Shown here in pieces: positions 29,202 to 50,470 of a stretch of 64,000 bases of DNA. Within the stretch, counting starts at the first letter, position 1, and each line of letters opens with the position of its first letter. Source of the stretch: Octopus sinensis. Its lineage: Eukaryota. The notes beneath the pieces are model-generated. The model was given only the letters and a program-made list of their open reading frames with translations, did not search any database and was not told the DNA's origin. The translations under genes were made by a program, and so were the position numbers. The stretch covers positions 55,614,001 through 55,678,000 of the forward strand of contig NC_043009.1 of NCBI RefSeq assembly GCF_006345805.1, written 5' to 3'.

Positions 29202-29385
29202 TATATATATATATAACACATATATATATATATATACACACATATATATATATATATACACACTATATATATATATATACACACATATATATATATATAT
29301 ACACACATATATATACACATATATATATATATATATATCTACACACACATATATATATATACACACTATATATATATATATCCAT
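28955..29385. repeat. Compound (TA)n(CA)n microsatellite, about 430 bp
   Basis: Directly visible; source of several spurious IY/YI ORFs. Confidence 0.95.
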
Positions 29386-30351: not shown

Positions 30352-30569
30352 CAAGAGGGTGCTGAAAAGTTCTTAGCTTTAAGGATTTTGCAAAAGGCCT
30401 AGTTGGGAGGCCCAAACTTCCAAGTTCTTTTATGGGGCTTAGAAAAACCAAAGGACCGCTGCAATAAGTGTGTGAATCTGAGAGAGGTATATGTTGAATA
30501 AAATCATAATTAATTGATCCTCATGTATTTTCTTTTTCTCAAAACCAAGAACTTTTCAGTATCCCCTCA
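30352..30569. mobile_element. Mariner-type MITE
   Basis: TIRs aagagggtgctgaaaagttct / agaacttttcagtatcccctca followed by TA; partial copy at about 10830-10950. Confidence 0.75.
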
Positions 30570-30781
30570 TATTGAAGCTGAAAATTTTTGATTACTGACT
30601 AGAGTGGTGCTCCAGTCTTTTTTCTTTTTAATTATTCAATTAATTTTGAAAATAATAAACTATTTAGTAAAATAACTCATTATGGAAGGTTTAAATTTAG
30701 ATCACTTTAAAATAGGAACTCTGTATTGCAGTGCCAGGGTAGTCTTGGGCAAACTGATATTAAAAGGGTTAATACTTTCAG

Positions 30782-31220
30782 CAGGGCTAGATTAAGAGCC
30801 ATAGAAGCCCTAAGCATTTAAAAGGTTTTAGTGCACTCAAGTAGATGTAAATGGTTCAAAATGTAAACAAAAATAATTCAAAATGTAATAAATAATAAAC
30901 CATAAAATAAATTTTTAGTTTTCAAAATGAAACAAAATTCACAGTAAGATGGAAAATTACATTTTTGTATACTTCCCCTTTATTTATATTTGAAAAGTTT
31001 CCTCCTTTTTTTTTTAATTGCAAAGTATTTGAGGATATCTTTAAATTAATTTTACATAAAACTTCTGCTCCTATACGTAGTAGAGATAAGGCATTACAAA
31101 TATTTTACCAAGTTTAAAGTGATTTCTTTAGTGCCATAAATCATTTTCATTTCTGTGGTGCCCCATCCCTTGATGCCCTTAGCACGGACTTATTTTGCTT
31201 AATGGGTTAACCCAGCGCTG
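30782..31220. mobile_element. hAT-superfamily MITE
   Basis: TIRs CAGGGCTAGATTAA / TTAACCCAGCGCTG; perfect 8-bp TSD ACTTTCAG (30774-30781, 31221-31228). Confidence 0.88.
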
Positions 31221-31612
31221 ACTTTCAGCTTAAGCAAATAAGTATGCAATACTCCACTGTGTTATGAACAAGTGCTGAGTTCTCTATTTGAATTTATGTG
31301 TTGTTTTAGAGAACAAATGTGTTATATATAATCATACATATACTTGCTTGTTTGGGGGTACAAGCAAGAGGAAGACTATTTAATAAGGGAAGTTGATGAT
31401 TCACTGTCACTACTCAGAGTTGCTAATGACAGATGGTTCAACTGATGAAATGTCAACCCTTTATCATATGAAGGATTGCATATCACAAGAAACTGAGCAG
31501 TGACAGAATGACCAGCTTCTGAATTTGTGTGTGTACACAAAGAAATGGAAAACCAAATATTTATAGACATAAACAAATGTGTGAGTATGAAATGTATGCA
31601 TGTGTATGTGTG

Positions 31613-31680
<68 letters not shown>

Positions 31681-33963
31681 CAGTTATGTATATACTTATT
31701 CTGATTTAAGTTGAAAAGTCATATACATAGATATACATATTGTCATACATACACAGACACACATATGTATATTTATACATGTGGTTGGTGTATTCAATAG
31801 TTGATGTTTTGTGTAATATAAACATCTAATATATGACACATTCCCATATACACTTTAGATGCTACATCAAATATTTGTCACCAAGTCACATGCTAACCCA
31901 GCTGGAGGAATCCCTCTTTCAACTCCACAGCACCATCTAGTTGGTGCTAGTGTTGTTTTAAAAATTTACTTTTGTTGCCATACTAAGTCAGCAGGGTGGT
32001 GAGAGGTTTATTTTTTTTCTTTCCATAATGCACCTAAGTAGAATTTGAAATAGAAACTGGAAGAGTTTGCACAAATGTCATAGGGTATCTCTCCTGATGC
32101 TCTGATAATTCTATCAACCTGCCATGAATTGGCACTTAATTTGCCAATCCTGAAAGGGTGAATGATGTCAATAAAATTTGAACTCAGGGCAACGACCTGA
32201 AATGAATACCACAAGGTATTCTGATAACTTACACTCTCCACTATTAATTGATCATGTTACCGTCATTATTAAACTGGTATTTGGATGGAATTTTGACGGA
32301 TTAAAAATGAGTCGTATGTCAGTTGAAGTTTTAAGTGGATTGAAAACTGAAACATACCATATATGAAGCTTCTCTTGAGGGTGCAAAGCATTGCATGGAT
32401 TGAGCACAAGGCCTAAGAGGAGAGGAGATTAATGGCCATATTTCATCTGTATCTACTATTATTACTGAATAAACTTTGCTGATTGTTGCTACCAAGCTGA
32501 ATACCAGGCCATATCAAGTGTTATATTTAGGAAACTTTTGAACACTAATAGTGAACAAAGGTCACACAAGCATATTGATGTTGTTGGCAGAGAGACACAA
32601 CAAAACAAACTGAGGACCTACTGAAATTAATAGCAACCAGAGATTCTTAATATGGCATGGCAAAATGCATCCTTGTAAATAGGAGAAATACTACAAGAGG
32701 GTGTGTATTATTGTTAATAATCTAAGTGAATTAACTATAATTGATATATAATACAGAGCCTCATGTATAAGAGATGGGTGTGTATAACAGTGAGTCTACA
32801 ACAATTATACATGCAAACACATGCAAAATATATAAAGTTTATTTAATTATCAAAGTTTCAAATGACATGACAGATTTATAACATAGACCAGGTGGGTGTC
32901 ACCTGATCTAAGTGCGGAATTAAAATTACTTAGGTGGTGCAAACCCAGGTCCAGAATATTTTACAAACAAGGTCAATCTTTTTAAATCTTAATATCAAAA
33001 CAAACACAGGTATAACAATAATAATTATTATAATATTTGTGCATCAATTAAATCAGGTAAATCTAATAATGGTAAAGTAATGCTTAAAATCAGCCCAGGA
33101 ATGTTTCTACCCTTGTTCATTCTAACGAAGTTTTACAAGAAAACGTTCAAAATATTTTCATCAACCCCTACCCAAAATTTTAGAGGGTACACTTGCATTT
33201 TCTACATTCCTTCTTCCTGAGCCTATAATATCTACCTGTTACTGATATTATCTATTTCAGTGGGATATGTCGCTGTCAGGTGAATGACTAAACTGCATTG
33301 CCAAGAGAGAGGTACGAGTATGATGTAACAGCTAAATTCAAGCACCTCCATAGTGCATTAGTTGAAGCCTGAACTAAGCCTGGACCAAGGGATATCTTCC
33401 CTCAGGTTATGAATTTTTGATCGATGAAATATATGCTTACAAATAATTGAGTGTGTAATATTAGAATCAAAAGCCATCCTTTGATTGACGTTAGCAAACA
33501 TCCATCAATATCAATTAATACTAGTTGTTTGGATTGATCAGTATTAAATTTCAGCCAATAACATCTGTTAGTGTTCTCTCAACCTCCATCCTTTCAGTTT
33601 GGTCTTGAAGAGTAACAACAAGAGTTTTCTTTTAAAGCCAAAATACAAAGGGATTGAAAAGGAATGGTATCAACCACCTCAAACAATCATAATGTTATAA
33701 TGTAAAAACAAAAATATGAAAAGAATAAGAGGAAAACTATATTGTATTTAAATAGACGCTATAAGGAGTGTGTGTGTGTGTGTGTGTATATAAAGGAGGA
33801 GAAGAGAGATGTGTATACAAATTCATTTAATGAATGAGTATCCAGATCAATGAGTGTAATGATTTTGTTTTCTTTATACTCCTTTATATCAGGTCACTAA
33901 GAATGGAATGTCCAGTTTTGAACTGAAGTTTATTTCACTTTATCTCAACAAAAAGCAATGCAG

Positions 33964-34320
33964 TTAATCAGAGTATGCACTTAAATTATCAACACAATTT
34001 TGCCTTTTTATTGGTAGTTTATGCCGGCAGTGTAGATTTCTGGAGAGCAAGAGGTGACGAAATCGCGAAAGGCTGGTTTTGCATCTTCTTCAGACTTGAA
34101 GCTTATTCCTGGCAAAAAGTTGTCTAATACCTGGAAAACATTATAGTCTGTCGGTGCAAGGTCTGGTGAATATGTTGGATGACTACTTGGATGACAGTTC
34201 AGTTCCTGTAACTTAGTAACATTCTTTGTGCAACATGTGGTCGAGCTCTGTCTCTATTTACCAATTTTGATTGTTTAATTGCAAGTTCACTCATCATTTC
34301 ATCCAACTGGTTGATGTATA
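33964..34320 (-). pseudogene. Mariner transposase C-terminal relic
   Basis: Minus strand DRARPHVAQ...HP.YSPDLAPTDYNVFQVLD...QNCVDNLSAYSD* with frameshifts. Confidence 0.85.
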
Positions 34321-34321
34321 A

Positions 34322-34713
34322 CTAGCACTATGACCTGGCGTTGCTGGGTCTAGTGCTACTGCTTGTTGTTCGTTGCCAGGTTGCAGTAAGAATTTCTCAC
34401 TAAATCAAAAGCTAAGTTTCTTATCACATTTCAGCCCGGGCCAGTTTTGTTGTTTTTGAGCTAGTTGGAGCTTTTTATGAGAGTAATTAATATTCATTGG
34501 ACTTCGGCAATGCCCATATGCCCATAACTAAGTTAGTTTATTGATTTTTTTAATGGCTTTCTGGGGTGACTGGGGAAATGAAAAGATTTTCAAGACCACC
34601 CTCAGACAGTTTTGAAAGCCCATAAAAAATGTGAGCCTTTTACATGAATAACTGTGGATTTGTATAAAGGACACATAAACACACAGACATTTTGCCATTT
34701 ATAGATATAGAGA
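34322..34713 (-). mobile_element. Non-autonomous Helitron, internally deleted copy
   Basis: A|TCTCTATATC ... gacccagcaacgccaggtc hairpin, atagtgCTAG|T; no TSD; homologous to 46288-46770. Confidence 0.8.
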
Positions 34714-37176
34714 TCTGCTGTAATTGACATACCGGGTCTCATGAAACTGTAGTGAATGACACCAGCACTGGACTACTAAATAGACACCATTACCTTTTTT
34801 TTTTGGTGAATATTCTTCTTTTGGATTATGTTTTGGCACTTCCACAACAGAACTCACATTCATAAACATGAATTTTTGATCAATGGGTTCGCAAAAATTG
34901 ATTTACAAGAGAAAACTTACAATATAATCAGACACCATGAACTGCATTTCGAAAAGTGATGATGTAACTCTTCAATGTTGTAAAACAAAGAATTGTCAGG
35001 ATAAAACATTAGAGTTAATGACTGTTAAACTTGATGCATAAGAAAACTGGACATTTCATTCTTAATGACCTGATATAAACAAAGACAGGAACAGAGAATG
35101 AACTCCTGATAATCCTGTCTGCAATTTCAGATAACATAGTAGGATGGGATTTGAGAAGATTTGGTTACTATTTCTAGCAGACTTAATGAGTACACAATAC
35201 ACTAACTTATTCACTGATACCTAAGTGAACTCTATTGTGTTTTCATAGTGCTGTAGCTGAATTTTGACTTGATATAACTTTAATTCCTTATTAGTGTATT
35301 TATTTTATTTCACAGTTTTATTTTCATTTCACTCTACAGTACAGACATGGTTGACATATGTAATTTGATTTATTTTTTAATAAAATATTTACATTTGAAC
35401 ATTCTTAGATAGCCTTCCTTGCTTGAGCTGATCATTCAGTTTCTAAACAAAAAGCAGGACTTAAGGAGGTATGTGTCATATTCAGAAGTACAGCACAACA
35501 AAGAAGTGTTAATGCCATAGAAATAACACAAAATACTGAAACAAAACCATGCAGAAGCTAAATTCTCAGAGAGTTGATCTAAATGTGTTTCAATCCATTT
35601 CTGGTTAATGGCAATCCAATCTCTTCGGTTGGATATCGAAACTCCAGCTAAATTGATATCCTCTCCATAATCAGTGTGATGAATAATTAATGTCAATGGG
35701 AGATGGTAGGAAGACTTAGCTGAACAAATTGAACAACTAATCAAAATGCAGTCAAATTTGGAAGATGTGAAATGCCTGTCTTTCTTCATGAAAGGGAAAA
35801 ATAACAATTAAGAAATTAAGAGGCAAAGACTCTATTTCATATGAATGCAGATTTCTTAGATACAGTGCAGGATTAAGACTGTAACATAACACATTTGGTC
35901 CCTAGGCCTTATTGAACTCTACTATATTCAAACAATCAATCGATAAACCTTTATTTATATCATTATTATTGCTGACCTTTGATCCCAGATCAGCCCTGAC
36001 CCAACAGACCTCTGATTGCAAATGTTTTAACTGCAACAATCCTATTCTTTCTTTCTTTTTTTTTTTCAGACACTGAATCTAAGAGCACATTATCAAAATG
36101 TATCTAATTATTTTAGCTTGTGGGATGTGATTTAGTAAAGTATTTGAGTGCTATTTCAACCATATTGAGTTTCCTTTCTTTTTGGTGAAGCATACTATCT
36201 TAACACTTAGCACAGAAAACGTGGTCCTCACTCCAGATGTTAGGGAGTTTGTTGATAAAAATTTGGATATTGTTTTATTTATACATAACTATATAGAAGT
36301 TTCATTACATGTTTGTTACACTTGCACAGCAAGGACAAAAGATTGGGCTGAATCAATGAGTGCAGGAGTGAAAGGGAGAATCAGAAATGATAAATATATA
36401 TTATATGAAATAAGAAGTTATATAATAATAAATACAATATATAAACTTATTACATTCATAAAATAGCAAAGAAATAGAATGAGAAACACAAAGTAAAACA
36501 AAACTTCCTGTAATTATAACCATATTTCAATGCAATGGGCATAAAGCTTGAGATTTATTGAGGAAGGAATTTTAGTTTTGCTGAATGGTGTGTTCTGCAA
36601 TGCTGGTTCAGTCACCAAAGAGAGAGAAAGACATGATTGAATAATGTTTTCAGTGTTGTAGTCATGGTTACCTTGTCTCTAATATGGACACATGATTTAA
36701 GACTCCAAACACATACATCTCTCCATTTTGAAGATGCCAGAAGGTTTGCTGAAGGAGATTTTGTTGCTTGATTGAGGAGGTTCAGCTAAAACAAAATCTA
36801 GACCTTCGTATTGGCTTCGCTTCCATACTAGTTGGAGGAAGAAATATAAAACTCATGGATATGTTTTTTGAAAAGTGTGAAAAATGTTTGCTTATATTCT
36901 TGGGAAAAGGTATGGACACCATACATTGTTATCTTCCTCATAAATCTAAAACTTCTTGTTCGTGTAACTAATAGAAAATAGGTTTTAAAAAAATGTTATT
37001 TTTACAATAATAAAAACTGTTTAGTATTTCACACACACAAAGATTTGATTAAGAATAAAGGAAACAATGCAAAAGGAACACAAACATTGTTTTTCTTTTT
37101 CTTTTAGTAGAAATGTTAAAATATGGAAAGCTAAATTAAAGAATGACAAGGGAAGGAAAAAAATAGCAATATTTAC

Positions 37177-37295
37177 CTTTTGAACAATTCTTCCAGTTCA
37201 CTTCTCCTAGTGAGAAGATGATAGAATTTCACAAATTCTTCACTATCCAAAGTTTGCTTACCATAACGGTTGGCAGTTTTGTTTGTGTTAGCTTC
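37177..37295 (-). CDS. PLC exon: EF-hand 2 (EANTNKTANRYGKQTLDSEEFVKFYHLLTRRSELEELFK)
   Basis: Acceptor ttttcttttaaag|, donor AAAG|gtaaat; 119 nt, phase 0/2; EEF..FY..LT.R.E motif. Confidence 0.92.
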
Positions 37296-38789
37296 CTTTA
37301 AAAGAAAAAAAAAATGATAATTTCTAGCCTTGTGTCTTTGTTAGAAACAATTATTAAAATTATTTATAGTCACACAGTACTGATGCTGTAACCTCTTTAA
37401 TTATGCTCCCTATTGAACCACAACCTATGGGCTTGGATGAGAAACACTCTTGCACTATCTTCTATTAAAGTCTCTTTATGCTATTCATATCTGTCCTTAC
37501 TTTATATTGCCAACTGACTGGATTATTCTCATTGAACCAAGTAAAAAGGTTTTCAACACAGCACTCACTCACAGATTGCTCTCAAATTATTTGCCACAGT
37601 TCCAAGGCCCCAATGATAATTTGCAGTATCATGACCTTGTTAATATCTTTATTCCAATGTTTGAGAATTTCGTTTTCCAAGATTCTATAATACTCTAATT
37701 TTCTTTCTTCTTTTTCTCAACTCTGGTTTCAAAAGGGTACATCCAGACATACTTTCTTTTTCTCATAACAACAACAAAATCCAACTTGTGCTCTGTCCTA
37801 TTTTCAGTATGTGTAGGAAAATCCCATATCTTCACATCATTGTCTTGAAGAGCTTTCATTTCTATTCTCACAAAAATAGTCAATGCTCCTTTTTTCATAT
37901 CAAAACAAAGAAAAAATATTGAACCTCTCAAAAAAATTCCAATGAATCATTGCAGCAATTTTCTTAAGCCTGTACTTTTATAATCATTTTGAGTTAACTT
38001 ATTTCTTTATTGGCCACAAGGGGCTAAACATAGAGGGGATAAACAAAGGTATTAAGTCGATTACATCGATCCCAGTGCATAACTGGTACTTAATTTATCG
38101 ACCCCAAAAGGATGAAATGCAAAGTCAACCTCGACGGAATTTGAACTCAGAACGTAACGGCAGATGAAATACCACTAAGCATTTCGCCCGGCATGCTAAC
38201 GTTTCTGCCAGCTTGCTGCCTTATTTTGAGTTAACTGTTGGCATCTTATATGATGTGAGCTATAGCCTCATCTATATCACTGAACATTCTATGAGTTTGA
38301 CTCAACTATGATTTTGTTCTTTTAACCATTAGTTTCTCAATACAATTTATCTTTAGCCATTTGCCTGTCCTGTTTATCACATGGACATATTTCTCTGGCA
38401 ACCAGGAATCATATATGATGTACATTCCCAATTTTTTCAACCACCATAGTAATTTGGTACCTATGAAAGAAAAGATTTATATTAATTACTCAGAACATGA
38501 AACGGGGGCTAACTAAAAGTCTGAAAACAGGTATTAATGTCTAGGACAAACTTATGAAATTTTTTGGACAGGTAAATGATTAAGGTTTGTTCCTCTGCTG
38601 CTAACTTTGCACCAAATTACAGACGGTCCTTTACTATCAGAAATGCAATGAGCCAGTGATTTACCCATTGGATACTTGTAACTAATAACACTTTTGTTCA
38701 CCTGTTATGAAACAAAATACATTTATTAATAAATGAAGTATAAAAAAAAAAAGAAATTAAGAACATGAAATAAATGCAAAAGAAATTAC

Positions 38790-38919
38790 ATTGAAAATCT
38801 GCAATATGTATTTCTTCTTCATGCGTGCATTAAGGCTCTTCAGTAGTTTAACCAGTTCATCGAAATCCACTTCACCATCAGAATTTTTGTCAGCACTTAG
38901 AAAAGCATCTCTGATCCAT
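38790..38919 (-). CDS. PLC exon: EF-hand 1 (WIRDAFLSADKNSDGEVDFDELVKLLKSLNARMKKKYILQIFN)
   Basis: AC acceptor, donor AAT|gtaatt; 130 nt, phase 2/0; canonical loop DKNSDGEVDFDE. Confidence 0.93.
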
Positions 38920-40644
38920 GTGAAAAGATTGGTTAAGGAACTTGTATGTCTTTGGTTAATATTACAATAACACTGTGTAACACAATTTTTGTCCTTGGGT
39001 AGCAACTGTTATTTCCTATTTGCTTACCCCTAGAAATTTGGGAATCTAGCTTCTTAACCACACAGCCACACCTTGTTTCAAGTGTGTGTGTTAATTTGAT
39101 GAGTAACAAGGCAAGTTGATCAAATGACTAAATACACATTGTCAAAATTAACAAAGGATCTATAAAATTTATTTACCATAAATCCTCGAGCATAGTCCAC
39201 CCTTGAGTATAATACGCAGGGGGTTTTTAGGGGGCTGTGCCTCTGAAAAATCTAAACCTTGTGTATAATACGCACCCTTTTTCTAACTTGAGTCATGTGT
39301 AATTAAGCTAGCAGCACCTAGTCGAACAAACACTTCCGCGTATGCGATGATGTTCTTAACTGTTATATGGGAATGTAAATATGTTTGCAAATTGTGTTTG
39401 TTACATGTTATTCTGTGTTCTGAATACTTTTATTTTAATAAATGTTGCTTACTGCAAGTTATGGATGATTCTTTTATGACTTCATTACTTTCAGGCTTAG
39501 CTTAAAGTATTTTCACACTCAACATCACAAAAAGTGTCTGAATAAACATTGCCGGACAGCAGATAGAGACTCGGACATTGCTTAGAAAATAATTTTCATT
39601 TTTAACCTCGTATATAGTATGCACAGGTATTTTGATCTTTAAATTTTGGGGAAAAAATGCAGATTATACTCGAGGATTTACGGTAGTTTACAACAGCAGA
39701 GTTGTAAATTAAATGCAAACAAATACACAGACAAGAATGCACAGAAAACAGAGAATATACATGAACTTCAGTTTACAAAATAGATGCATTTTTTAAATGC
39801 ATGTTGTTACTTAACCCCAGGTCAACTCTGATCAAGTAACCTTAGCATCATCAATCATTGTCCTCAACATTTAACATCTGTTTTCCATGCTGGCATGGGT
39901 TGGACAGGTTAACATGAACTGGCAAGGCCAGGGACCACGCCAGATTCCATAGTCTGTTTTGGCTTGGTATAGCTGGATGTCCTTCCTAATGACAGCCACT
40001 ATTTTTCTATACCTATCACTATAGGTGGGTATCTATCATAGATGGGTTCATCATCATCAGAATCATTTTAACCTCTACTTTTTCACTTTGCATGGTTTGG
40101 ATGGAATTTGATGAGGTGCAGTTTTTACAGCTGGATGCTCTTCCTGATGCCAACCCTCCAAGTAAGATAATATTTCTTCATGACCAGACATGTCTTGGAA
40201 GACTGGAAATGAAGGTCACTACGTGTATGATGGTAATACTTGCTTACAACTATCATGTAATGCCAGGAAAAGGGGACAGTAACACACACACACAAAATCC
40301 TACATGTATGTATCCATACATAAATACAATGGGTTTCTTTCAGTTTCTGTGTGTCAAATCCACTCACAAGTCTTTGGTCGGCCTGGGGCTCTAGTTGAAA
40401 ACAACTGCCCAAGATGTCGCACAGTAGGACTGAAACTGAAACCATGTGGTTGGGAAAAAAACGTTCTTACTACACAGCCATGCTTGCGAATATAAAGCTA
40501 TCAACCATCAGTGAAACAAAAGTTGTATCTAATGAACTCATTTATTATAGAAACAAAAGATTTGGTTGACTATTATGTTGCTAAAGAATCATTAGAAACA
40601 ACATTTAATAAAGCAATTTATAAAAAAACAGGAACAAAGGATAT
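38920..40644 (-). other. U12-type AT-AC intron (1725 nt)
   Basis: 5' end ATATCCTTT; branch TTCCTTAAC at 38940-38932; 3' end caatcttttcAC|; junction AG+A restores frame (YD-R-WIRDAF). Confidence 0.93.
39176..39683. mobile_element. Tc2/pogo-like MITE inside the AT-AC intron
   Basis: TA|CCATAAATCCTCGAGCATA ... TATACTCGAGGATTTACGG|TA. Confidence 0.85.
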
Positions 40645-40796
40645 CTGTCATATTCTCTCTCTTGTTGGGCAGATTTTTCAGAGGCAATCACATGACGAAG
40701 TCCTCGTACCCACATGTCTCTAAGATTTTCATTTGGACTCATCAGTGTGACAAGATTATGGCGTGCACCAACCACAATACTAAAACATTGCTCTTT
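40645..40796 (-). CDS. PLC exon: PH domain C-part (KEQCFSIVVGARHNLVTLMSPNENLRDMWVRGLRHVIASEKSAQQEREYD)
   Basis: Acceptor tttttttccag|, ends GACAG|ATATCCTTT (U12 AT donor); 152 nt, phase 0/2; CFSIV and WV.GL motifs. Confidence 0.92.
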
Positions 40797-41811
40797 CTGG
40801 AAAAAAAGATATAAAACAAGAAAAATAAGTTAAATACACAGCAATAAAATAAAAATCCAACATAAAACTAAAATGAAATGATCAAGAATTGTATGCCTGC
40901 ACACACACACACACCTGCATATGCGCAAATATGCAGAGAGACTGGAACATGTAGATACCTAAACAGATACCCATACATGCACACTCAGACAGATATATAA
41001 TGAGAGAGAGAAACAGAGAGAGAGAAGCATACGCCCACATCCAAAGATAGACAAACATATATATATACATACATACAAATACACACATACCAGTACAGAT
41101 ATACGGTTACTACATGAAAAGAGAGAAGAGCACGACATACTGACACCTGCAGACAGCTAAAGACAGACTTATGCACAACCGGAACACACACAGATAGACA
41201 TACACATTTGTATACACACACACACACACGTTTATTCACACAAGTGAATATATATGCACAGACAAATAAACACGCACTAATGCAGACATTCAGCTACAAC
41301 ATAGAGAGAAAGAGAGAGGTGGCGAGAGAGGACTAGATCTACATTCAGACACACATACACACCCACACAGATAGATAGATACATAGATAGATAGATATAG
41401 ACATACAGACAGACATACACATGGGCATACACACTCAAAAATAGAAACTTGCATTCTGTATACTTTCTTTTCTGAGCAATTTGTAATTATGTGTGTGTGT
41501 GAAGGTGATCAATACAATAATTCAGTCTAATAAATTAATCAATAACATGAATCAATACAATAAGTTACTACAATAAATCAATATATAATAACAATATATT
41601 TTACTGCTAGGATGGTGGATCAGTAGAATTGCTAATGATAAATAAGGCACCTTGTGCTGTATTGTTACAACACTTTGTGCCATGAGTTCAAACCGAACCA
41701 ACATCAAATTTAGTTTTCAGCCTTTTGAAGGTTGGGAGAATGGATGTCAGCAAAGTAGTACACTAAAATAAAATAGTACATTAGGACACTAGTAAAATGC
41801 TAGTGTTATTG

Positions 41812-42203
41812 ACTCTTTTACTTGTTTCAGTCATTTGACTGTGGCCATGCTGGAGCACCGGCTTTAGTCGAGCAAATCGACCCCAAGACTTATTCTTTGT
41901 AAGCCTAGTACTTGTTCTGTCAGTGTCTTTTGCTGAACTGCTAAGTTACAGGGATGCAAGCACACCAGCATCGGTTGTCAAGCAATGTTGGGGGGGGGGA
42001 CAAACAGACACACAAACATATACACACACACATACATATATACGACGGGCTTCTTTCAGTTTCTGTCTACCAAATCCACTCACAAGGCTTTGGTCAGCCT
42101 GAGGCTTAGTAGAAGACACTTGCCCAAGGTGCCATGCAGTGGGACTGAACACGGAACCACGTGGTTAATTAGCAAGCTATTTACCACACAGCCACTCCTA
42201 CGC
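41812..42203 (-). mobile_element. SINE family A, full length
   Basis: Same consensus as 10172-10578. Confidence 0.9.
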
Positions 42204-42214
42204 CTTCCCTCAAA

Positions 42215-42597
42215 CTTGAGGCAGTGTGGTAAGAAGTTTGCTTCTAAACCACATGGTTCTGGGTTCAGTGCTATTGCATGGCATCTTGGGCAAGTGTTTT
42301 CTACTCTAGCCTTGGGCTAACCAAAGCCTTGTGACTTGCTTTGGTAGACAGAAACTGAAAGAAGCCTGCTGTGTATATGCACAAACACACACACATGTGT
42401 GTGTCCCACTACTGCTTGACAACTGTTGTTGGTGTGTTTATGTACTTTTATACACAAGCAGTTCAGCAAACCAAACCAATAGTAAAGTACCAGGCTTAAG
42501 GAAAGAAAGCACTCGGATTGATTCATTCAACTAAAAATTCCTCAAGGCGGAGCCCCAGCATGGCCATAGCCTAATGACTGAAACAAGTAAATAAAAA
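42215..42597 (+). mobile_element. SINE family A (diverged), head-to-head with the previous copy
   Basis: gaggcagtgtggtaagaag...ggcatcttgggcaagtg...gactgaaacaagtaaa. Confidence 0.8.
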
Positions 42598-42829
42598 TAG
42601 GAATATTAATATACAAATCAACTTATTGTTTGGGAAGTAAAAGTGGGAGTTTGCTGGATATACCATAGAAAAAAGGTATCAAAAGTTATATTTGAATATG
42701 ACGGATCCCATCCTAAAAGAAATGGCTTCTCATAGTCCCTCAATAACAAACATCACTGGACGTTTTTGTACAAATTGACCCCTATTGATGTAGACAACTA
42801 CAACCTTTTGGTATTGTAACTCATTGTTA

Positions 42830-43310
42830 TCCCCATTATGATATTCATCCCTCATAGGATCAGCCTTCACATCTTTCCCTATCTTCCTTGGCCTTTCTCT
42901 TCCACGGATAACCTTCCACTTGGATTGTTTGGCACTGTTTCACCAAGCTACCATCCTCCATATGGATCTTATGCTTGTATCATCACAATCTTCTAACTGT
43001 ACACTACAGTAGACTCCTCTTATATTCAGGTTTTCTCTCAGATCATTTGTGTTCTGTCATTTATGTATGTTAACATGATACTTTCAGTTTTACATGCCCA
43101 GCCCTTTTCTTCCCAGCCTCCACAACCCCTGAATTCATTGACCAGGTTTCACAACCCTACCATGCAATATCACACTTCATATTTGCTCATCATGTAATCT
43201 AATTGTCACAGAGTGAATCCCTTTGTTACCAAGCAGAGGTGATAGCTCCTTGAAAACCCATACCATGCCAGTGTTTGCTGTTCCCTATGTGACCCATGTT
43301 CAAAGTTTAT
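42830..43310 (-). mobile_element. Degenerate RTE-like LINE fragment
   Basis: Minus strand MEDGSLVKQCQTIQVEG..GRERPRK resembles the RGRPRK.W end of RTE ORFs; heavily frameshifted. Confidence 0.45.
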
Positions 43311-43616
43311 TTTACTTTGGAAAATTTGGAAAAAGGAGGTAAGAAAAAAAATTACTCAGTCCATGCTGTAAAGTAATTGGTGTTAGGAAGGGCATCCAGC
43401 TGTAGAAACCATCCCAAAGTAGATACTGGAGCACAGTACAATCTTTGGATACTGTCAAACTGTCCAACCCATACCAGCATGAAACAGACATTAAATAATG
43501 ATGATGAAATTCAGGTATTTCAGTTGGTATTCAATACTTTCAGCTTAAATAAGTATATAATAGCTTACTATGTTATGTACAGGTATTGAGTTCTTTATTA
43601 AAATTTATGTTTTGTT

Positions 43617-44005
43617 CTAGGAGCAGGAGTGGCTTCATAGGTGCAGGAGTGGCTGTGTGGTAAGTAGCTTGCTTACCAACCACATGGTTCCAGGTTCAGT
43701 CTCACTGCATGGCACCTTGGGCAAGTGTCTTCTACTATAGCCTCAGGCTGACCAAAGCCTTCTGAGTGGATTTGGTAGATGGAAACTGAAAGAAGCCCGT
43801 CATGTATATGTATATATATGTGTGTCTGTGTTTGTCCTCCCAACATCGATTGACAACCGATGCTGGTGTGTTTACGTTCCCGTAACTTAGTGGTTCGGCA
43901 AAAGAGACCGATAGAATAAGTACTAGGCTTACAAAGAATAAGTCCTGGAGTCAATTTGCTCGACTAAAGGTGGTGCTCCAGCATGGCCACTTGTAAAAGA
44001 GTAAA
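43617..44005 (+). mobile_element. SINE family A with a deletion in its tail
   Basis: Full head and body; tail reads catggccac-ttgtaaaaga, lacking agtcaaatgactgaaacaa. Confidence 0.88.
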
Positions 44006-45077
44006 ATACATTATCATATATACCTCAACCCATACACACACACACTCGTTTGTTTGGGGCACAAGCAAGAAAAAAAGTATTCAATACATGTAATAGGACT
44101 TTGAAAATTTGATGACTCACTGTCATGACTCAGAGCTGTTAGCAATAAGAAATAGTTCCACTGACAAAATAACTTTGTCAACCATTTCCTGCCAGTAATA
44201 TCTTCAGAGTAGTAATACGTCATGCAAAAATATGCAAGTCATATGTGCTTCTCTACTGCTCTCCCAGAAGACAAGTGCTACATATCAAATGTGAAATGGT
44301 AACAATTTTAACAATTAAAAACAAAGTTGTGAGGGACCAAATTTCATAGGCTTATAGTGATGGTTTTTACAAACTATGTTATAATGCTGAGCTAGAGTAA
44401 GTAAAAACATCATCGTCATCATCATCACCACCACCATCATCATCATCACCATCATCACTGTTTTAATGTCCACTTTTCTATGCTTGATTTGTTCCACAGA
44501 GTTTATTGAAGCAGATTTTCTACAGCTGGTTGCTTTCCATGTCACCAAACTTTACTTGTTTCCATGGCCAGATATGGAGAATATTGGAAATGAAAAACAC
44601 TGCTTGTATGACAGGGACACTCATTTACAACTGTCACATGATGGCAAAACGAGGAAATGCAAACACACTCACACACACACATATATATTTAATGCATATA
44701 TATGATGAAATTCCTTCAGTTTTTGTGTACTAAATCTACTCACAAGGCTTTGGTTGGGTTATAGTAGAAGTCACTTACCTAAAGTGCCATGCAGTGGGAA
44801 GCAGGGAGCAAACTTGTTAACCATACAGCTACACCTGTGTCTACATGATTTCAAACTAACTTAATCTTTGTTTTCTGAGTGTATATTAAGAAAATTTACC
44901 ATTTTTAGTGAGTGAGTGAGTGGCACTCACCTGGCTTAATCAGAATATAACCACCAACCAAATTCACAAGCAAAACAGATTACTTCTTTTTTCATGGCAG
45001 CCAGATAAAAAAGAAGTAAAAAAAAAAAGGGTATTCAAAGAGAAAATAATAGTTTGAACATGCTATAAAATTCTTAC

Positions 45078-45148
45078 ATTTAGGTTTCGAAATCTTTTCG
45101 TATGGCTGTTCTCTCCCAATCGAATTTCAATTATGTTGTGTAGAGCAA
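45078..45148 (-). CDS. PLC exon: PH domain middle (IALHNIIEIRLGENSHTKRFRNLN)
   Basis: Acceptor ctctttcttttacag|, donor AAT|gtaaga; 71 nt, phase 1/0; matches I.EIR.G motif; absent from the ORF track. Confidence 0.9.
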
Positions 45149-46287
45149 CTGTAAAAGAAAGAGAAGGAAAATATTACTACCATTTGTATTGTTCTGGTCA
45201 TTGAGTTGCTAGTAAGGTTGCTTTATAAATATTTTATGAACAGTAACATCTTGAAAACAAAAGTTTAATATTTGATTTCATAAATATGTGAAATTGAAAT
45301 TTGTGAAATTGATAAAATAAATATAATTTGCAATTAAAATTTGCAGTTTATTGTGACTTAAAATTCCTGCAACTTCATGTAAAACCTTTTGCCAAGGTCT
45401 GCCTGCAGTTAGCATCTCTCACTGTCACTCAAACTCACTCTATCTGCTGCTTTAGTTTCCCTCTACCCATGTGACCAGCATGAAACACGTTGCACTTTAT
45501 TACATTGTATAAGGCACACACACAAACAGAATGAAATTTTATGTTTAGATTCGTCTAAAAAATAAAAGCTGGTGTTATGTTGTGTCACTTCACACCCTGT
45601 AACTTAGTGGTTGACATACAGAGACCAATAAAATAAGTATTTCATAAGTTTTCTCTCTCAGATTAGTCCTTTTAATGTCTAATATCGGAGACTATTAAGT
45701 ATTTTAATAGAATTGTAAGAGAATTAAGAAAGCAAAAAAAGGAGGGACACATGAGACAACGTTGTTCTAGATATACAACACCTGAAAAGACAAGCTTGTC
45801 ATGTCATATATAGAAAGCCTTTTTTTTTTATTATAGTTCTGATTGATTGTAGTTGACCTAGAGCTCAACAACAACAACTAGACTGGAATAGTTAACAATG
45901 GTTTGCACCAGTATAAATCAGTTTAAAAAGCTAAACAAATCCGGTGTATGTTAGTGTGATCTTTTGAAATGGAGCTTTTGATCATAGAAAGCTTGAGTCA
46001 TGGTCAAGTTGTTTATCAAAGACTCATAAGCAATACATACAATTGCAGCTCTCATGGAATGCAGTTACACAGCTGATGAAAGGAGAGGGGAGAGAGAGAG
46101 AGGGTAAAGGGGAGAGAGAAAGGGTAAAGGGGAGAGAGAGAGAGAGAGAAAGAGAGTGGTAAAATGTTGAGAGAGGCATTTCCTTAGTGAAGAAGATGTC
46201 CCCCCCCTCTCTCTCTAAACGACAACATAGGAACCTAAAAAACATTAGTAAGTGATAGTGCATGCTGATAGCAAGTGATGGCCATTA

Positions 46288-46770
46288 TCTCTATATCTAC
46301 AAACGGCAAAATGTCTATCTGTGTATCCTTTATACAAATCCACAGTTTTTCATGTAAAAGGCTCGCATTTTCTATGGGCTTTCAAAACTGTCTGAGGGTG
46401 GTCGTGAAGATCTTTTCATTTCCCCACTCACCCCAGAAAGCCATTAAAAAAAAATTGATAAACCAACCCCTTATGCCCATAAGTTATTTTGCAGCCAAAT
46501 TCGAGTTTTTTGCTTTCTTCTGCCTCCTTTTTTGTCCGACTAATGGCATGTGCACAGTCCCGCTAATTTTCCATGGTGTGAAAACCGAAGTCCAATAACT
46601 ATTAATTACTCTCATAAAAAGCTCCAACTAGCTCATAAACAACAAAACTGGCCCAGGCTGAACTGTGATAAGAAACTTAGTCCTTGATTTAGAGAGAAAT
46701 TTTTACTGTGACCCGGCAACCAACAACAAGCACTAGCACTAGACTTGGCAACGCTGGGTCATAGTGCTAG
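46288..46770 (+). mobile_element. Non-autonomous Helitron
   Basis: A|TCTCTATATC start, GC-rich hairpin at 46742-46760, CTAG|T end, no TSD. Confidence 0.85.
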
Positions 46771-46789
46771 TAATTATTAAGGCTGGAAT

Positions 46790-47438
46790 ATGGACAAAAT
46801 CATTTGAGCACTGGAAAAAATGCCTTGCAGCATTTGTTCCAATTCTTCACATTCTGAGTTCAAATCCTGCTGTGGTCAACTTTATACTTGACTAGTACTT
46901 TATTTTATCAAACCTTAAGAGATGAAAGACAGAGTCAATTTAATCAACTCTCTGTCCCTAAATTTCAGGCCTTGTGCCTATATTAAAAACAAATTTTATT
47001 TTTATTGCTGTTCTTGTCTAGGATTTGGAGAAATGCCTTGCAACATGTTCCAGCACTTTACATCCTAAGTTCAAATCCTACCAAAGTCAACTTTGTTTTT
47101 CGTTCCTCCAAGCTTGATAAAATATATTACCCATCTAGTACTGAAGTAGATGGGACTGACTAAATCCCCTCCCTTTAAACTTAGTGGGTTTGTATCTAAA
47201 TCAGAAACTATTATAAGCATCGTTATTATTATTATTATTTTTAAGGCAGTGATCTGGCAGAATCGTTAGCATGCTGGACGAAATGCTTAGCAGTATTTTG
47301 CCTGTCGCTTATGTTCTGAGGTCAACCTTGCTTTTGTACTTTCAGAGTTGATAAAATAAGTGCCACTTGAACACTGGGGTTGATGTAATCGACTCATCCC
47401 CCTTCTCCAAAATTGCTGCTTATGTGGCAAAATTTGGA

Positions 47439-47481
<43 letters not shown>

Positions 47482-48115
47482 TGGTAAGCTGACAGAATTG
47501 TTAGCATGCTGGGCAAAATGCTTAGCGACATTTTATCTGTTTGCACATTCTACCATGGTCAACTTCACCATTCATGTTTTTGGGGTCGATTAATTAAGCA
47601 CTGGGGTTGATATAATTGGCTAGTCTCCTCCCCTAACATTTCAGGCCTTGTGCCTTTAGTAGAATGTGAGCTGGCAGAATCATTAGCATACTGGACGAAA
47701 TGCTCAGCAGCATTTCTTCTAGATTCACATTCTGAGTTCAAATGCTGCTGAGGTCAACTTTACCTTTCATCCTCAATAAAATAAGTAGCAGTTGAGCAGT
47801 GGGAGTCAATGTAATTGAGTAGCTCCCTCCCCTAAAATTTCAGGCCCTGTGCCTATAGTGGAAACAATTATCATCATCATCACCATAATTATTATTTAGG
47901 CCCTGTAAGGTTGCAAACTAGCAGAGTTGTTACTGCACCAGGCAAAATGCTTAGCAGTATTTCTTATGGTTCTATGTTCAAATGCTGCCGAGGTCAGTTT
48001 CGTCTTTCATCCTTCCAGGATTGATAAAATAAGTACCAGTTGAGTACTGGAGTCAATATAATCAACCTCCCCCTTATCTCCAAATTGCTGACCTTGTGCC
48101 AAAATTAGAATTATT
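46790..48115 (+). repeat. Head-to-tail array of about six diverged family B SINE copies
   Basis: Units start near 46790, 47020, 47241, 47478, 47665 and 47905; several end in (att)n or (atc)n. Confidence 0.8.
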
Positions 48116-48215
48116 TAGGCACTGTCACATATTGAATTTTAGGATTTGTTGTGCCTTGTTCTCCCAGAACTAAGCATAAACCATCCCTACAAATTCTTAT
48201 TTAACTGCAGGCACT

Positions 48216-48610
48216 CTTTTACTTGTTTCAGTCATTTGACTGCGGCCATGCTGGAGCACCATTTTTAGTCGAGCAAATCGACCCCAGGACTTATTCTTTG
48301 TAAGCCTACTACTTATTCTATCATTCTCTTTTGGTGAACCGCTAAGTTATGGGGATGTAAACACAGCAGCATTGGTTGTCAAGCGATGGTTGGGGGGGGG
48401 ACGAACATATACACAAACATATACACACATGTACATATATTTATACATATATACGATGGGCTCCTTTCAGTTTCCGTCTACCAAATCCACTCACAAGGCT
48501 TTGGTCGGCCCAAGGCTATAGTAGAAGACACTTGCCCAAGGTGCCACGCAGTGGGATTGAACCTGGAACCATGTGATTGGTAAGCAAGCTACTTAGCACA
48601 CAGCCACTAC
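48216..48610 (-). mobile_element. SINE family A, full length
   Basis: Same consensus. Confidence 0.9.
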
Positions 48611-50238
48611 TACACAATTTTTTTCCTCTTTTTAATGACAGAGTTTAAAGAAGACATTGCAATGGAAAGGTATCATTTGGCTCAGTAAACTAAAGTTAAC
48701 ATAATCTTGACATGAGGACAAGTATAAAAACAGCCATGCTATCAGGTTAACATGAGGGCATGTGAATTGTTGGTTATTTATGGCCATAGTGACCTAAATT
48801 TATGGTGAAGATTATGACTTTAGTTTATCTTCAATGACACAATTGTGTGTGTGCGTGTAAGAGCATGGAGAAAAAGTGAAAGGTGAGAGTATAATTGAAG
48901 GGAAAGAGTGAGAGAAAGGAGATTAGGCAAGTGAAGTGAAAGAGAATTACAGGATAGCATTCTAGCCTTTACCCTGTGACATTCCAATTTAAAAATATGC
49001 AAGGAAGTGTGATAAATCTGAGTTTTCTTTTGATCTTTATTCAGAATGTGGTGGTCTCCATCAGTTTTCTTTGTATTTAAATAATAATAAACAACCACCA
49101 ACATGCCGGATAATCAACAGAATACAGTTTGCATTCCACACAGACACTATACAAGCACTAAAACAAAAGACTGCAACCATATCCCATAACAAAACAAACT
49201 GACACTATACAATACTAGGAAGAGTTTGCACTCCCCCCCCCCCGACAACAAAAAAGAACATACAATGCTGCGTACACTCATACACATCAGCATCATGAGG
49301 TGTAGCAGATGATGCAGTAGAAACCTACCTGAAACTAACAAATGTTGAAAAATAATAATAATAATAATAATAATAAAAATAATAATAATAATAATCATAA
49401 TCATAATGATGATAGAATAATAATAATAATCATGATGATTGAATAATAATAACCATGAGGCAATTAAAAGTTGCTTGAAACTATCAGATGTCTAAAAATA
49501 ATAGTGGTGATGATGATGGGGATGAACGTTACCATACCTCAGTTTATGAGAGGCAGGAGTTTCTGAAGAACGCTGGTTGTAACAGCAAAAATGAAGCTGG
49601 ACCTTTAAGGGAAGGCCTTTCATTCGGCAGTGGATCAGTAAAGATGCAGACTGACCACAGTTGTCATCCTAATACAGCATCAGCAGATAATAGAGCGAGG
49701 AGGAGGAAGTGAACCAGTGAAGAAAACAGGATAGTGATGCAGTGCTTATTCTATCACTCTATTTTGCTGAACCACTAAGTTACAGGATGTAAATTCACCA
49801 TCACTGGTTGTCAAACAGTGGTGAGGGACAAACACAGTCACACACACACACACACATACACTTGACTTCTTTCAGTTTCCATCTATCAAATCCACTCACA
49901 AAACTTTGGTTGGTCTGAGGTTGTAATAGAAGACACTTGCCCAAAGTGCCATGCAGTGGGACTGAACCCAGAACCATGTAGTTAGGAAGCAAGCTTCTTA
50001 TCCCACAATAACATTTAGTTACAGATGTTTTAAAATAAATTCTTCTGTTCCACCAAAGGATGCAATCATGAAGGGTACGTTTTTTTTTTTTTTTTGCAGT
50101 CTGGAAATTATTCCCTCAGTCTCTTTTACTGAACTACTAAGTTATGGGAACAAAGAAATCAACACCTGTTGTGAAGTTGTGGCAATGGGGTGACAAAAAC
50201 ACACACACACAAATATATATATATACATACACATATAT

Positions 50239-50470
50239 AGGCGGCGAGCTGGCAGAAACGTTAGCATGCCGGGCGAAATGTGTAGCCGTATTTTGTCTGC
50301 CGTTACGTTCTGGGTTCAAATTCCACCGAGGTGGACTTTGCCTTTCATCCTTTCGGGGTCGAAAAATTAAGTACCAGTTACGCACTGGGGTCAACGTAGT
50401 AGACTTAATCCATTTTGTCTGTCCTTGTTTGTCCCCTCTGTGTTTAGCCCCTTGTGGGTAGTAAAGAAAT
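50239..50470 (+). mobile_element. SINE family B (CpG-rich, apparently young) inserted in the microsatellite of a family A SINE
   Basis: aggcggcgagctggcagaaacgttagcatgccgggcg...gtaaagaaat; host parts at about 50118-50238 and 50471-50640. Confidence 0.88.

What the first reader, a model, noticed from the sequence alone, without database searches (positions are those of the whole stretch)
38920..40644. AT-AC minor-spliceosome intron between the PH and EF-hand exons
Seen: ATATCCTTT donor, TTCCTTAAC branch 11 nt before the terminal AC, and no usable AG nearby. Only this junction gives an open PLC frame (EYD-R-WIRDAF). Established: AT-AC U12 introns are rare and GT-AG-only predictors often mis-model them. 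The intron carries a 508-bp MITE and SINE debris. Gene models here may be wrong, and retention would truncate the protein after the PH domain (inference).
Basis: partly seen in the sequence, partly recalled or inferred. Interest (0 to 1): 0.72.

Follow-up and report, generated by a model that had tools for sequence, protein, structure and literature searches.

The report
Conserved AT-AC minor intron in octopus PLC gene
The flagged stretch is a real, textbook AT-AC "minor spliceosome" intron in an octopus phospholipase C-delta-like gene. It is the mollusc counterpart of a minor intron already catalogued at what appears to be this same spot in vertebrate PLC-delta/eta/zeta genes, so it is correct but ordinary.

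Summary
On the minus strand, exon 40796-40645 ends ...GAC AG and is followed by ATATCCTTT. TTCCTTAAC lies at 38940-38932, the intron ends in AC at 38921-38920, and exon 38919-38790 begins A TGG ATC. Joining 40645 to 38919 gives EYD-R-WIRDAF inside an uninterrupted 423-aa PH/EF-hand/PI-PLC-X model built from 12 exons. The Octopus bimaculoides protein A0A0L8I8M9 has exactly this junction.

An intron sits at the same codon position (phase 2, just before the conserved W) in every relative I fetched.
- AT-AC: Lymnaea and shark PLCH2-like. Bird PLCZ1 shows the matching 3' end.
- GTATCC-type GT-AG: gecko PLCD1, bird PLCD3 and fish PLCD4.
- U2-type: a pseudoscorpion.

Olthof et al. 2019 already list PLCD1/3/4, PLCH1/2 and PLCZ1 as minor-intron genes. 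Larue and Roy 2023 already surveyed Octopus sinensis minor introns.

Two side claims are overstated: "no usable AG nearby" and "only this junction is open". The 508-bp MITE and the short repeats are real. In passing, I found a second U12-like (GT-AG) intron in the same gene at 2858-1146. It is shared with Lymnaea and absent from the vertebrate genes examined.

The parts
40645..40796 (-). Exon 4 of the model (end of the PH domain). It encodes KEQCFSIVVGARHNLVTLMSPNENLRDMWVRGLRHVIASEKSAQQEREYD plus the first two bases (AG) of the split Arg codon.
   Evidence: Pfam PH match
40636..40644 (-). U12-type 5' splice site ATATCCTTT, starting at the first intron base
38920..40644 (-). AT-AC U12-type intron, 1725 nt, phase 2 (intron 4 of the model)
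   Evidence: positional conservation
38932..38940 (-). Branch-site motif TTCCTTAAC. The presumed branch A is at 38933, 13 nt upstream of the last intron base.
38920..38921 (-). Terminal AC of the intron. There is no polypyrimidine tract upstream of it.
38790..38919 (-). Exon 5 (first EF-hand). It supplies the last base of the Arg codon, then WIRDAFLSADKNSDGEVDFDELVKLLKSLNARMKKKYILQIFN, and ends at an ordinary GTAATT donor.
39176..39683 (.). 508-bp non-coding element with terminal inverted repeats CCRTAAATCCTCGAG, flanked by TA at 39174-39175 and 39684-39685 (MITE-like). It is single-copy in this window.
40281..40498 (.). Copy of a short interspersed repeat. Up to 11 other copies in the window overlap it, at 71-81% identity and in both orientations.
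39861..40294 (.). Further low-copy repeat fragments (39861-39994 and 40100-40294, 2-4 copies each in the window)
1072..51051 (-). Part of the host gene lying in the window. It has 12 exons (51051-50899, 45148-45078, 40796-40645, 38919-38790, 37295-37177, 14054-13988, 12784-12691, 9451-9334, 5756-5671, 4425-4305, 2944-2859, 1145-1072). These give an open 423-aa PH / EF-hand / PI-PLC-X protein. The gene continues past the low end of the window.

Best explanation
Positions 38920-40644 (minus strand) are a U12-dependent (minor-spliceosome) intron of the AT-AC subtype. It lies in an octopus phospholipase C-delta-like gene, between the last PH-domain exon and the first EF-hand exon.

Mechanism (inferred from established knowledge of U12 splicing, not shown here):
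- U11 snRNA pairs with the 5' splice site ATATCCTTT.
- U12 snRNA pairs with TTCCTTAAC and bulges the branch adenosine about 13 nt from the 3' end.
- U4atac/U6atac.U5 then complete catalysis.
- The result joins ...GAC AG to A TGG ATC..., which encodes EYD-R-WIRDAF.

The intron is ancestral. An intron at this codon position and phase is present in every PLC-delta/eta/zeta-type gene I fetched. It is AT-AC in molluscs, shark PLCH2-like and bird PLCZ1 (3' end seen). It has switched to a GTATCC-type GT-AG intron in gecko PLCD1, bird PLCD3 and fish PLCD4. It has become an ordinary U2-type intron in a pseudoscorpion.

If the intron is retained, translation stops 14 codons into it. That leaves a PH-only fragment or a likely nonsense-mediated-decay target. 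The MITE and short-repeat copies are passengers in the middle of the intron and touch neither splice signal.
For: Shown by the sequence:
- The 5' splice site matches the consensus perfectly, and the branch motif matches perfectly at the canonical distance.
- The termini are AT-AC and there is no polypyrimidine tract.
- In contrast, 9 of the other 10 introns of the same gene in the window have GTAAG, GTAAA, GTAAT or GTGAG donors and T-rich acceptors.

Reading frame: the junction gives an uninterrupted 423-aa model with PH, EF-hand, EF-hand-like and PI-PLC-X domains.

Ortholog: the O. bimaculoides protein P0001 has the identical junction peptide.

Conservation at the DNA level, same position and phase:
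- Lymnaea, AT-AC.
- Shark PLCH2-like, AT-AC.
- Gecko PLCD1, GTATCCTTTT.
- Bird PLCD3, an 88-nt GTATCCTTGG...TTTCCTTAC...TAG intron.
- Fish PLCD4, GTATCCCT.
- Bird PLCZ1, TTTCCTTAAC...CATAC|.
- Pseudoscorpion, GTGACC...ttgttgttgtag, U2-type.

Literature:
- Human and mouse PLCD1/3/4, PLCH1/2 and PLCZ1 minor introns are listed with CA|GTATCC, CA|ATATCC or AG|ATATCC donors (PMC6717393 supplements).
- 60% of PLC genes contain minor introns (PMC6865273).
- Octopus sinensis is one of the species in the pan-eukaryotic minor-intron survey, which reports that molluscs are relatively minor-intron rich (PMC10639083).

Retention stop codon.
Against: - No transcript or spliced-read evidence from this species was available.
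- The O. bimaculoides junction comes from a predicted protein whose evidence basis I could not inspect. That same model is wrong further downstream, where it lacks the [12 protein letters not shown]... exon.
- Formally, 132 other stop-free dinucleotide pairings exist around the junction.
- Use of the minor spliceosome itself is inferred from sequence rules and not measured.
- That the listed human and mouse introns occupy this same position is inferred. It rests on their 3-nt exon context and on the fetched vertebrate loci, not on direct mapping.
Confidence: 0.93

Rival explanations
1. The exons are joined by the major spliceosome through cryptic GT-AG sites. One example is donor TTT|GTTCCT at 40636 with acceptor GGATCAG| at 38911, giving ...EYDRYPLDAFLSADK. 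Another is donor TGG|GTACGA at 40710 with an upstream AG.
For: Such pairings are in frame and free of stops. An AG lies 8-9 nt downstream of the AC and another lies 21 nt upstream. GT-AG-only gene predictors seem to choose this kind of workaround in other genomes. The Saccoglossus P0010 model reads ...QWLLSLIILCTWIRDFF.
Against: The donors match almost none of the MAG|GTRAGT consensus. The products delete or replace the conserved W-I-R, or insert non-homologous residues. The O. bimaculoides protein matches the AT-AC product exactly. A GTATCC- or ATATCC-type intron at this exact position is conserved in six other genes.
Confidence: 0.03
2. It is an AT-AC intron, but it is removed by the major (U2-type) spliceosome, as a few AT-AC introns are.
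For: U2-type AT-AC introns exist (established knowledge). The spliceosome actually used was not measured here.
Against: By established knowledge, U2-type AT-AC introns have ATAAGT-like 5' sites and a polypyrimidine tract. This intron instead has ATATCCTTT, TTCCTTAAC at 13 nt, and no tract. The positional homologues are curated minor introns.
Confidence: 0.02
3. The locus is a decaying or non-expressed gene copy, and the splice signals are relics that are no longer used.
For: No expression data were available for this genome. The first coding exon was not found in the window.
Against: All 12 exons in the window are open and collinear. Per-exon protein identity to O. bimaculoides is 86-100%. All 11 intron boundaries are intact, and both U12 signals match their consensus perfectly.
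Confidence: 0.02

Closest known systems
Minor (U12-type) introns of vertebrate PLCD1, PLCD3, PLCD4, PLCH1, PLCH2 and PLCZ1, as listed in the Minor Intron Database paper (Olthof et al. 2019, PMC6717393)
   Same: - The gene subfamily is the same (PH/EF/X architecture).
- In the vertebrate loci I fetched, the intron position is the same: phase 2, split codon directly before the conserved W that opens the EF-hand region.
- The 5' site class is the same. Human PLCH1 is CCA|ATATCCTTT, PLCH2 is CCA|ATATCCTTG, PLCD3 is CCA|ATATCCTGC and PLCZ1 is GAG|ATATCCATT.
   Different: - The host is a mollusc.
- The split codon is AG|A (Arg), not CA|N (Gln/His). PLCZ1 also has AG|.
- PLCD1 and PLCD4 in vertebrates, and PLCD3 in birds, are GT-AG subtype, whereas this one is AT-AC.
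- That the listed human and mouse introns occupy this exact position is inferred from their exon context plus the fetched loci. It was not mapped directly.
Orthologous intron in Lymnaea stagnalis (GCA_964033795.1, contig CAXITT010001075.1; locus L001)
   Same: It is AT-AC, with AG|ATATCCTTT at the donor and a branch motif 9-10 nt before a terminal AC. The codon is the same (Arg, phase 2). The gene also carries a second GTATCC-type intron at the same downstream position.
   Different: It is about 480 nt rather than 1725 nt. It is filled with a tandem-like repeat instead of a MITE and dispersed short repeats. The branch motif is CCTTTAAC rather than TTCCTTAAC. The residue after the junction is N, not W.
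Classical AT-AC U12 introns (for example in NOP2/P120, and in the voltage-gated sodium and calcium channel genes)
   Same: The consensus elements are /ATATCCTT, TCCTTAAC 10-15 nt from the 3' end, AC| at the end, and no polypyrimidine tract. This comes from established knowledge and the introduction of PMC10639083.
   Different: The host gene is different. Nothing about the signals themselves differs.

Membership tests
U12-type (minor-spliceosome) intron, AT-AC subtype | 5' splice site matching /ATATCCTT | tested here: met
   ATATCCTTT at 40644-40636, directly after the last coding base 40645
U12-type (minor-spliceosome) intron, AT-AC subtype | Branch-site motif TCCTTAAC-like, about 10-15 nt from the 3' splice site | tested here: met
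   TTCCTTAAC at 38940-38932. The branch A at 38933 is 13 nt from the last intron base.
U12-type (minor-spliceosome) intron, AT-AC subtype | Terminal AC and no polypyrimidine tract | tested here: met
   The intron ends ...acatacaagTTCCTTAACcaatcttttcAC|ATGG. The U2-type introns of the same gene have long T-runs before AG.
U12-type (minor-spliceosome) intron, AT-AC subtype | The junction is really used in mRNA | tested here: inconclusive
   There are no reads or cDNA for this species. Two indirect supports exist. The sister-species protein P0001 has the identical junction. The Lymnaea annotation uses the homologous AT-AC junction.
U12-type (minor-spliceosome) intron, AT-AC subtype | Removal depends on U11/U12/U4atac/U6atac | not testable with these tools
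   This needs a splicing assay. No minor snRNA gene lies in the window (Rfam scan found nothing).
U12-type (minor-spliceosome) intron, AT-AC subtype | The host lineage has a working minor spliceosome and other minor introns | not tested
   Literature only. Octopus sinensis is included in the pan-eukaryotic minor-intron survey, which calls molluscs relatively minor-intron rich (PMC10639083).
Conserved PLC-delta/eta/zeta minor intron at the PH/EF boundary | Same codon position and phase as the U12-type intron in other members | tested here: met
   Phase 2, immediately before the conserved W (N in Lymnaea), in Lymnaea, gecko PLCD1, bird PLCD3, fish PLCD4, shark PLCH2-like and bird PLCZ1. The position is the same but the intron is U2-type in a pseudoscorpion.
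PLC-delta-like phosphoinositide phospholipase C (PH, EF-hands, X, Y, C2) | PH domain, EF-hands and catalytic X domain in order | tested here: met
   Pfam matches: PI-PLC-X 2.1e-61, EF-hand_like 1.5e-20, EF-hand_7 4.7e-10, and PH 3.1e-05, which is just under the cut-off. The best hits are PLC-delta, eta and zeta proteins.
PLC-delta-like phosphoinositide phospholipase C (PH, EF-hands, X, Y, C2) | Y domain and C2 domain | not testable with these tools
   The gene runs off the low end of the window after exon 1145-1072.
MITE (non-autonomous DNA transposon) | Terminal inverted repeats, target-site duplication and small size | tested here: met
   24-nt arms, 88% complementary. The core CCRTAAATCCTCGAG occurs only at the two ends, where 0.06 matches are expected. 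TA flanks both sides. The element is 508 bp. I did not check coding capacity below the 130-aa ORF cut-off.
MITE (non-autonomous DNA transposon) | Many copies in the genome | tested here: inconclusive
   There is no second copy in this 64-kb window. The rest of the genome was not available.

The most novel reading that the evidence does not exclude
The gene needs the minor spliceosome twice. Besides the AT-AC intron, intron 2858-1146 has a perfect GT-AG-subtype U12 donor (GAA|GTATCCTTTT). It also has TTCTTTAAC 13 nt before its terminal AG and no polypyrimidine tract.

The same position (phase 1, after the ILG/TFG motif at the end of the X domain) compares as follows:
- Lymnaea has a GTATCCTTCC intron there.
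- Limulus has an ordinary GTAAGG intron there.
- Gecko PLCD1, bird PLCD3, shark PLCH2-like, bird PLCZ1 and a carp PLC-beta have no intron there.

On this reading, molluscs preserve a second ancestral U12 intron of the PLC-delta lineage. Chelicerates converted it to U2-type, and vertebrates lost it. The one gene family would then show AT-AC to GT-AG switching, U12-to-U2 conversion and outright loss side by side.
Probability: 0.7. Interest if true: 0.3.

Novelty: new member of a known kind. Interest (0 to 1): 0.17.

Why it matters
- **Annotation.** Splice models restricted to GT-AG will break this gene at the PH/EF boundary. Models of relatives show what that looks like. The bird PLCZ1 model reads into the intron, and the Saccoglossus models lose the linker. 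The true junction should be enforced.
- **Biology.** The gene's expression is tied to minor-spliceosome activity. Retention would stop translation just after the PH domain.
- **Evolution.** The intron is a clean positional marker. It shows that the PLC-delta/eta/zeta minor intron predates the protostome-deuterostome split.
- None of this is unexpected. PLC genes are a recognised minor-intron-rich family (PMC6865273), and octopus minor introns have been surveyed genome-wide (PMC10639083).

Tried and rejected
1. A protein search with only the 93-aa junction peptide found nothing, because the tool needs shared 5-mers. A longer 326-aa model then worked.
2. I asked whether the second GTATCC intron (2858-1146) is the known PLC-beta minor intron, because human PLCB3 is listed as GGA|GTATCCTTT. 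This was rejected for the region tested. A carp PLC-beta-like gene has no intron at that position and no GTATCC or ATATCC donor at any exon end of its X-domain region.
3. The other gene-strand ATATCCTT (60884-60891) and TCCTTAAC (56286-56293) were inspected as a possible further AT-AC intron. They lie in repeat-like or non-coding sequence with no exon next to them.
4. An Rfam scan and ARAGORN on the whole window found nothing. They were meant to give the short repeats a tRNA-derived SINE identity, or to find snRNA genes.
5. ORFs of 130 aa or more in the window are only low-complexity artefacts. There is no transposase or reverse transcriptase.
6. The Exaiptasia PRIP-like protein P0061 could not be traced to a contig, so no cnidarian data point was obtained.
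7. Levine and Durbin 2001 (PMC60238) is not held in the library.
8. No protein in the two hit lists exceeded about 570 aa, so full-length RefSeq octopus PLC models, if present in the collection, were not seen.
Full report
**What is at the coordinates.**
Read on the minus strand, a coding exon ends ...GAA TAT GAC AG at 40645. The next nine bases are ATATCCTTT (40644-40636). About 1.7 kb further on lies TTCCTTAAC (38940-38932), then CAATCTTTTC, then AC (38921-38920). Coding sequence resumes with A TGG ATC AGA GAT GCT TTT at 38919.

**Is it more than chance?**
- Taken alone, the motifs are not enriched in the window. ATATCCTT occurs 3 times against 3.5 expected. TCCTTAAC occurs 2 times against 2.3 expected.
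- The signal is in the placement. One motif starts at the first base after a coding exon. The other sits at the canonical distance from the first base of the next coding exon.
- From the per-position rates, and about six allowed offsets, I calculate about 3e-9 per exon pair.
- The other gene-strand copies of the motifs (60884-60891 and 56286-56293) have no exon next to them.

**The host gene.**
- A heuristic probe and then the Octopus bimaculoides protein P0001 located 12 exons on the minus strand between 51051 and 1072.
- Spliced together, they give an open 423-aa protein with PH, EF-hand, EF-hand-like and PI-PLC-X domains. The Y and C2 domains must lie beyond the low end of the window.
- The best database hits are PLC-delta, eta and zeta-type proteins.
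- The closest hit is O. bimaculoides A0A0L8I8M9, with 86-100% identity per exon. The window therefore comes from another Octopus species.
- Nine of the eleven introns in the window have ordinary donors (GTAAG, GTAAA, GTAAT or GTGAG) and T-rich acceptors. The two exceptions have GTATCC- or ATATCC-type donors and no polypyrimidine tract.

**Evidence that the junction is the real one.**
- P0001 reads ...SAQQEREYDRWIRDAFLSADKNSDG..., which is identical across the junction.
- I enumerated every GT-AG, GC-AG and AT-AC pairing with the last exon base in 40770-40541 and the first exon base in 39030-38831. This found 132 in-frame, stop-free combinations.
- AGs do exist nearby, at 38942-38941 and 38912-38911.
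- The listed alternatives that I examined have donors with almost no match to the U2 consensus (for example TTT|GTTCCT). Otherwise they cut away the C-terminal helix of the PH domain, or insert non-homologous residues.
- Among the alternatives I examined, only 40645|38919 reproduces the orthologous protein. The printed list was cut, and I did not score the sites with a splice-site model.

I fetched genomic loci for relatives and read the DNA at the homologous junction. In every case the intron splits the codon just before the conserved W, in phase 2.

| Gene (locus) | Splice-site sequence | Type |
|---|---|---|
| Lymnaea stagnalis (L001) | AG\|ATATCCTTTG ... CCTTTAACTGTCCACAC\|G | AT-AC |
| Shark PLCH2-like (L004) | CA\|ATATCCTTCC ... 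GTCCTTAACTGTTATCCAC\|G | AT-AC |
| Gecko PLCD1-like (L002) | CA\|GTATCCTTTT ... CTCCTTATAATCGATTCAACAG\|C | GTATCC-type GT-AG |
| Bird PLCD3 (L003) | CA\|GTATCCTTGG ... TTTCCTTACCCCGCTGTAG\|T (88 nt) | GTATCC-type GT-AG |
| Fish PLCD4 (L005) | CA\|GTATCCCTGA ... TTTTCCTCAGCATCTTCTCAG\|A | GTATCC-type GT-AG |
| Bird PLCZ1 (L006) | 3' end TTTCCTTAACTGGATCTCGCATAC\|G TGG; the deposited partial model reads into it | AT-AC 3' end |
| Pseudoscorpion (L009) | AG\|GTGACC ... ttgttgttgtag\|G TGG | U2-type |

The intron is thus ancient, at least as old as the bilaterian ancestor. It shows the known evolutionary paths of minor introns: AT-AC to GT-AG subtype switching, and U12-to-U2 conversion.

**What is already known.**
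- The supplements of Olthof et al. 2019 (PMC6717393) list one minor intron each in human and mouse PLCD1, PLCD3, PLCD4, PLCH1, PLCH2, PLCZ1 and PLCB1-4. The listed donors include:
  - PLCD1: GCA|GTATCCTTT
  - PLCD3: CCA|ATATCCTGC
  - PLCH1: CCA|ATATCCTTT
  - PLCH2: CCA|ATATCCTTG
  - PLCZ1: GAG|ATATCCATT
- PLCL1 and PLCL2 (PRIP) are not listed.
- The CA| and AG| exon ends match what I saw at the PH/EF boundary in the fetched vertebrate loci. I infer that the listed delta, eta and zeta introns are this intron, but I did not map them directly.
- Baumgartner et al. 2019 (PMC6865273) name phospholipase C as a minor-intron-enriched family (60% of genes).
- Larue and Roy 2023 (PMC10639083) include Octopus sinensis in their pan-eukaryotic survey and note that molluscs are relatively rich in minor introns.
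- The finding is therefore a correct identification of a new orthologous member of a known, catalogued minor intron. It is not a new kind of feature.

**Mechanism.**
- Shown: the sequence signals, the frame, and the conservation.
- Inferred from established knowledge of U12 splicing:
  - U11 pairs with ATATCCTTT.
  - U12 pairs with TTCCTTAAC and bulges the branch A.
  - U4atac/U6atac.U5 complete the reaction.
- Retention gives EYDRYPLFLFFYKLLY-stop. That is a PH-only fragment or a probable nonsense-mediated-decay substrate.
- Whether retention is regulated here is unknown.

**Contents of the intron.**
- The 508-bp element at 39176-39683 has inverted ends CCATAAATCCTCGAG and CCGTAAATCCTCGAG. 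These lie within 24-nt arms that are 88% complementary. TA flanks both sides, and the end motif occurs nowhere else in the window (0.06 expected). That is MITE-like anatomy, but copy number could not be tested.
- Segment 40281-40498 belongs to a short repeat that stacks up to 11 further copies in the window. Segments 39861-39994 and 40100-40294 have 2-4 copies each.
- No tRNA-like head was detected, so "SINE" remains a reasonable label, not a demonstrated one.
- By my sum, repeats make up roughly 60% of the intron. Neither splice signal is touched.

**Gene-model concern.**
- I could not see this genome's annotation.
- In the sister species the junction is modelled correctly, although the same model is wrong at a later exon.
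- Models in other phyla do look broken at exactly this junction:
  - Saccoglossus P0010 reads ...AMQWLLSLIILCTWIRDFF. This is what a read-through of TCCTTAAT...CAC|ATGG would encode. That is an inference, because no DNA was available.
  - Saccoglossus P0108 lacks the linker residues.
  - The bird PLCZ1 model reads into the intron.

**Side finding.**
- Intron 2858-1146 of the same gene has GAA|GTATCCTTTT at its donor, TTCTTTAAC 13 nt before the terminal AG, and no polypyrimidine tract.
- The splice gives ...KTILG-N-NLYIHDDNAPCPSPHDL... This aligns with Limulus ILGDYLYCTPV, Sinanodonta TFGKSLYAPDV and Patella ILGDLLWSPEG.
- At the same position (phase 1):
  - Lymnaea has GAG|GTATCCTTCC ... CAACTTAACTATTAATGTACAG|.
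  - Limulus has a U2-type GGAG|GTAAGG intron.
  - Gecko PLCD1, bird PLCD3, shark PLCH2-like, bird PLCZ1 and a carp PLC-beta have no intron.
- It is not the PLC-beta minor intron, at least in the carp X-domain region.

**Verdict.**
The feature is a conserved, already-catalogued type of minor intron in a recognised minor-intron-rich family, so interest is low. The remaining gap is direct transcript evidence from this species.

Noticed in passing
window 1146-2858 (minus strand), between exons 2944-2859 and 1145-1072: This is a second U12-like intron in the same gene, of the GT-AG subtype. It has donor GAA|GTATCCTTTT, TTCTTTAAC 13 nt before the terminal AG, and no polypyrimidine tract. The same position and phase carries a GTATCCTTCC intron in Lymnaea and a U2-type GTAAGG intron in Limulus. 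The vertebrate PLCD1, PLCD3, PLCH2 and PLCZ1 genes and a carp PLC-beta have no intron there.
   Followed up: partly
protein P0001 (Octopus bimaculoides A0A0L8I8M9), residues about 332-380, compared with window exon 5756-5671: The sister-species protein model replaces the conserved X-domain exon ([28 protein letters not shown]) with unrelated sequence (LFLQLPSAEKLPLHLASS...). It then stops at ...FKTSP. That model is therefore faulty and truncated downstream, although the AT-AC junction in it is right.
   Followed up: no
proteins P0010 and P0108 (Saccoglossus kowalevskii), P0103 / locus L006 501-520 (Jacana PLCZ1), P0061 (Exaiptasia PRIP-like): Deposited gene models in other phyla look wrong at exactly this PH/EF junction. 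P0010 reads ...QWLLSLIILCTWIRDFF, as if translating the branch site and 3' end of an AT-AC intron. P0103 starts inside the intron 3' end (TTTCCTTAAC...CATAC|G TGG). P0108 and P0061 lack the linker and the W.
   Followed up: partly
locus L003 2730-2818 (bird PLCD3) compared with the human and mouse PLCD3 entries in PMC6717393: The subtype differs within one orthologue. PLCD3 is listed as AT-AC (CCA|ATATCCTGC) in human and mouse. In the passerine Sapayoa it is an 88-nt GT-AG intron (CA|GTATCCTTGG...TAG).
   Followed up: no
window 14055-37176 (minus-strand intron 6): This is a 23-kb intron, by far the longest in the window. It contains a roughly 450-bp TA/TATACA-type low-complexity tract at 28940-29395, which produces spurious ORFs on both strands.
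   Followed up: no
locus L007 about 14860-15670 (Limulus PLC eta-2-like gene): There are several tandem near-copies of the short [14 protein letters not shown] exon fragment, spaced about 110 bp apart and upstream of the real exon. This may be a local tandem duplication or an assembly artefact.
   Followed up: no
locus L001 5300-5680 (the Lymnaea AT-AC intron): The Lymnaea orthologous intron is filled with a roughly 60-bp tandem-like repeat (...ggactcacat(t/a)gca(t/c)acacttacttgacaaatttaccagg...) rather than transposon copies.
   Followed up: no
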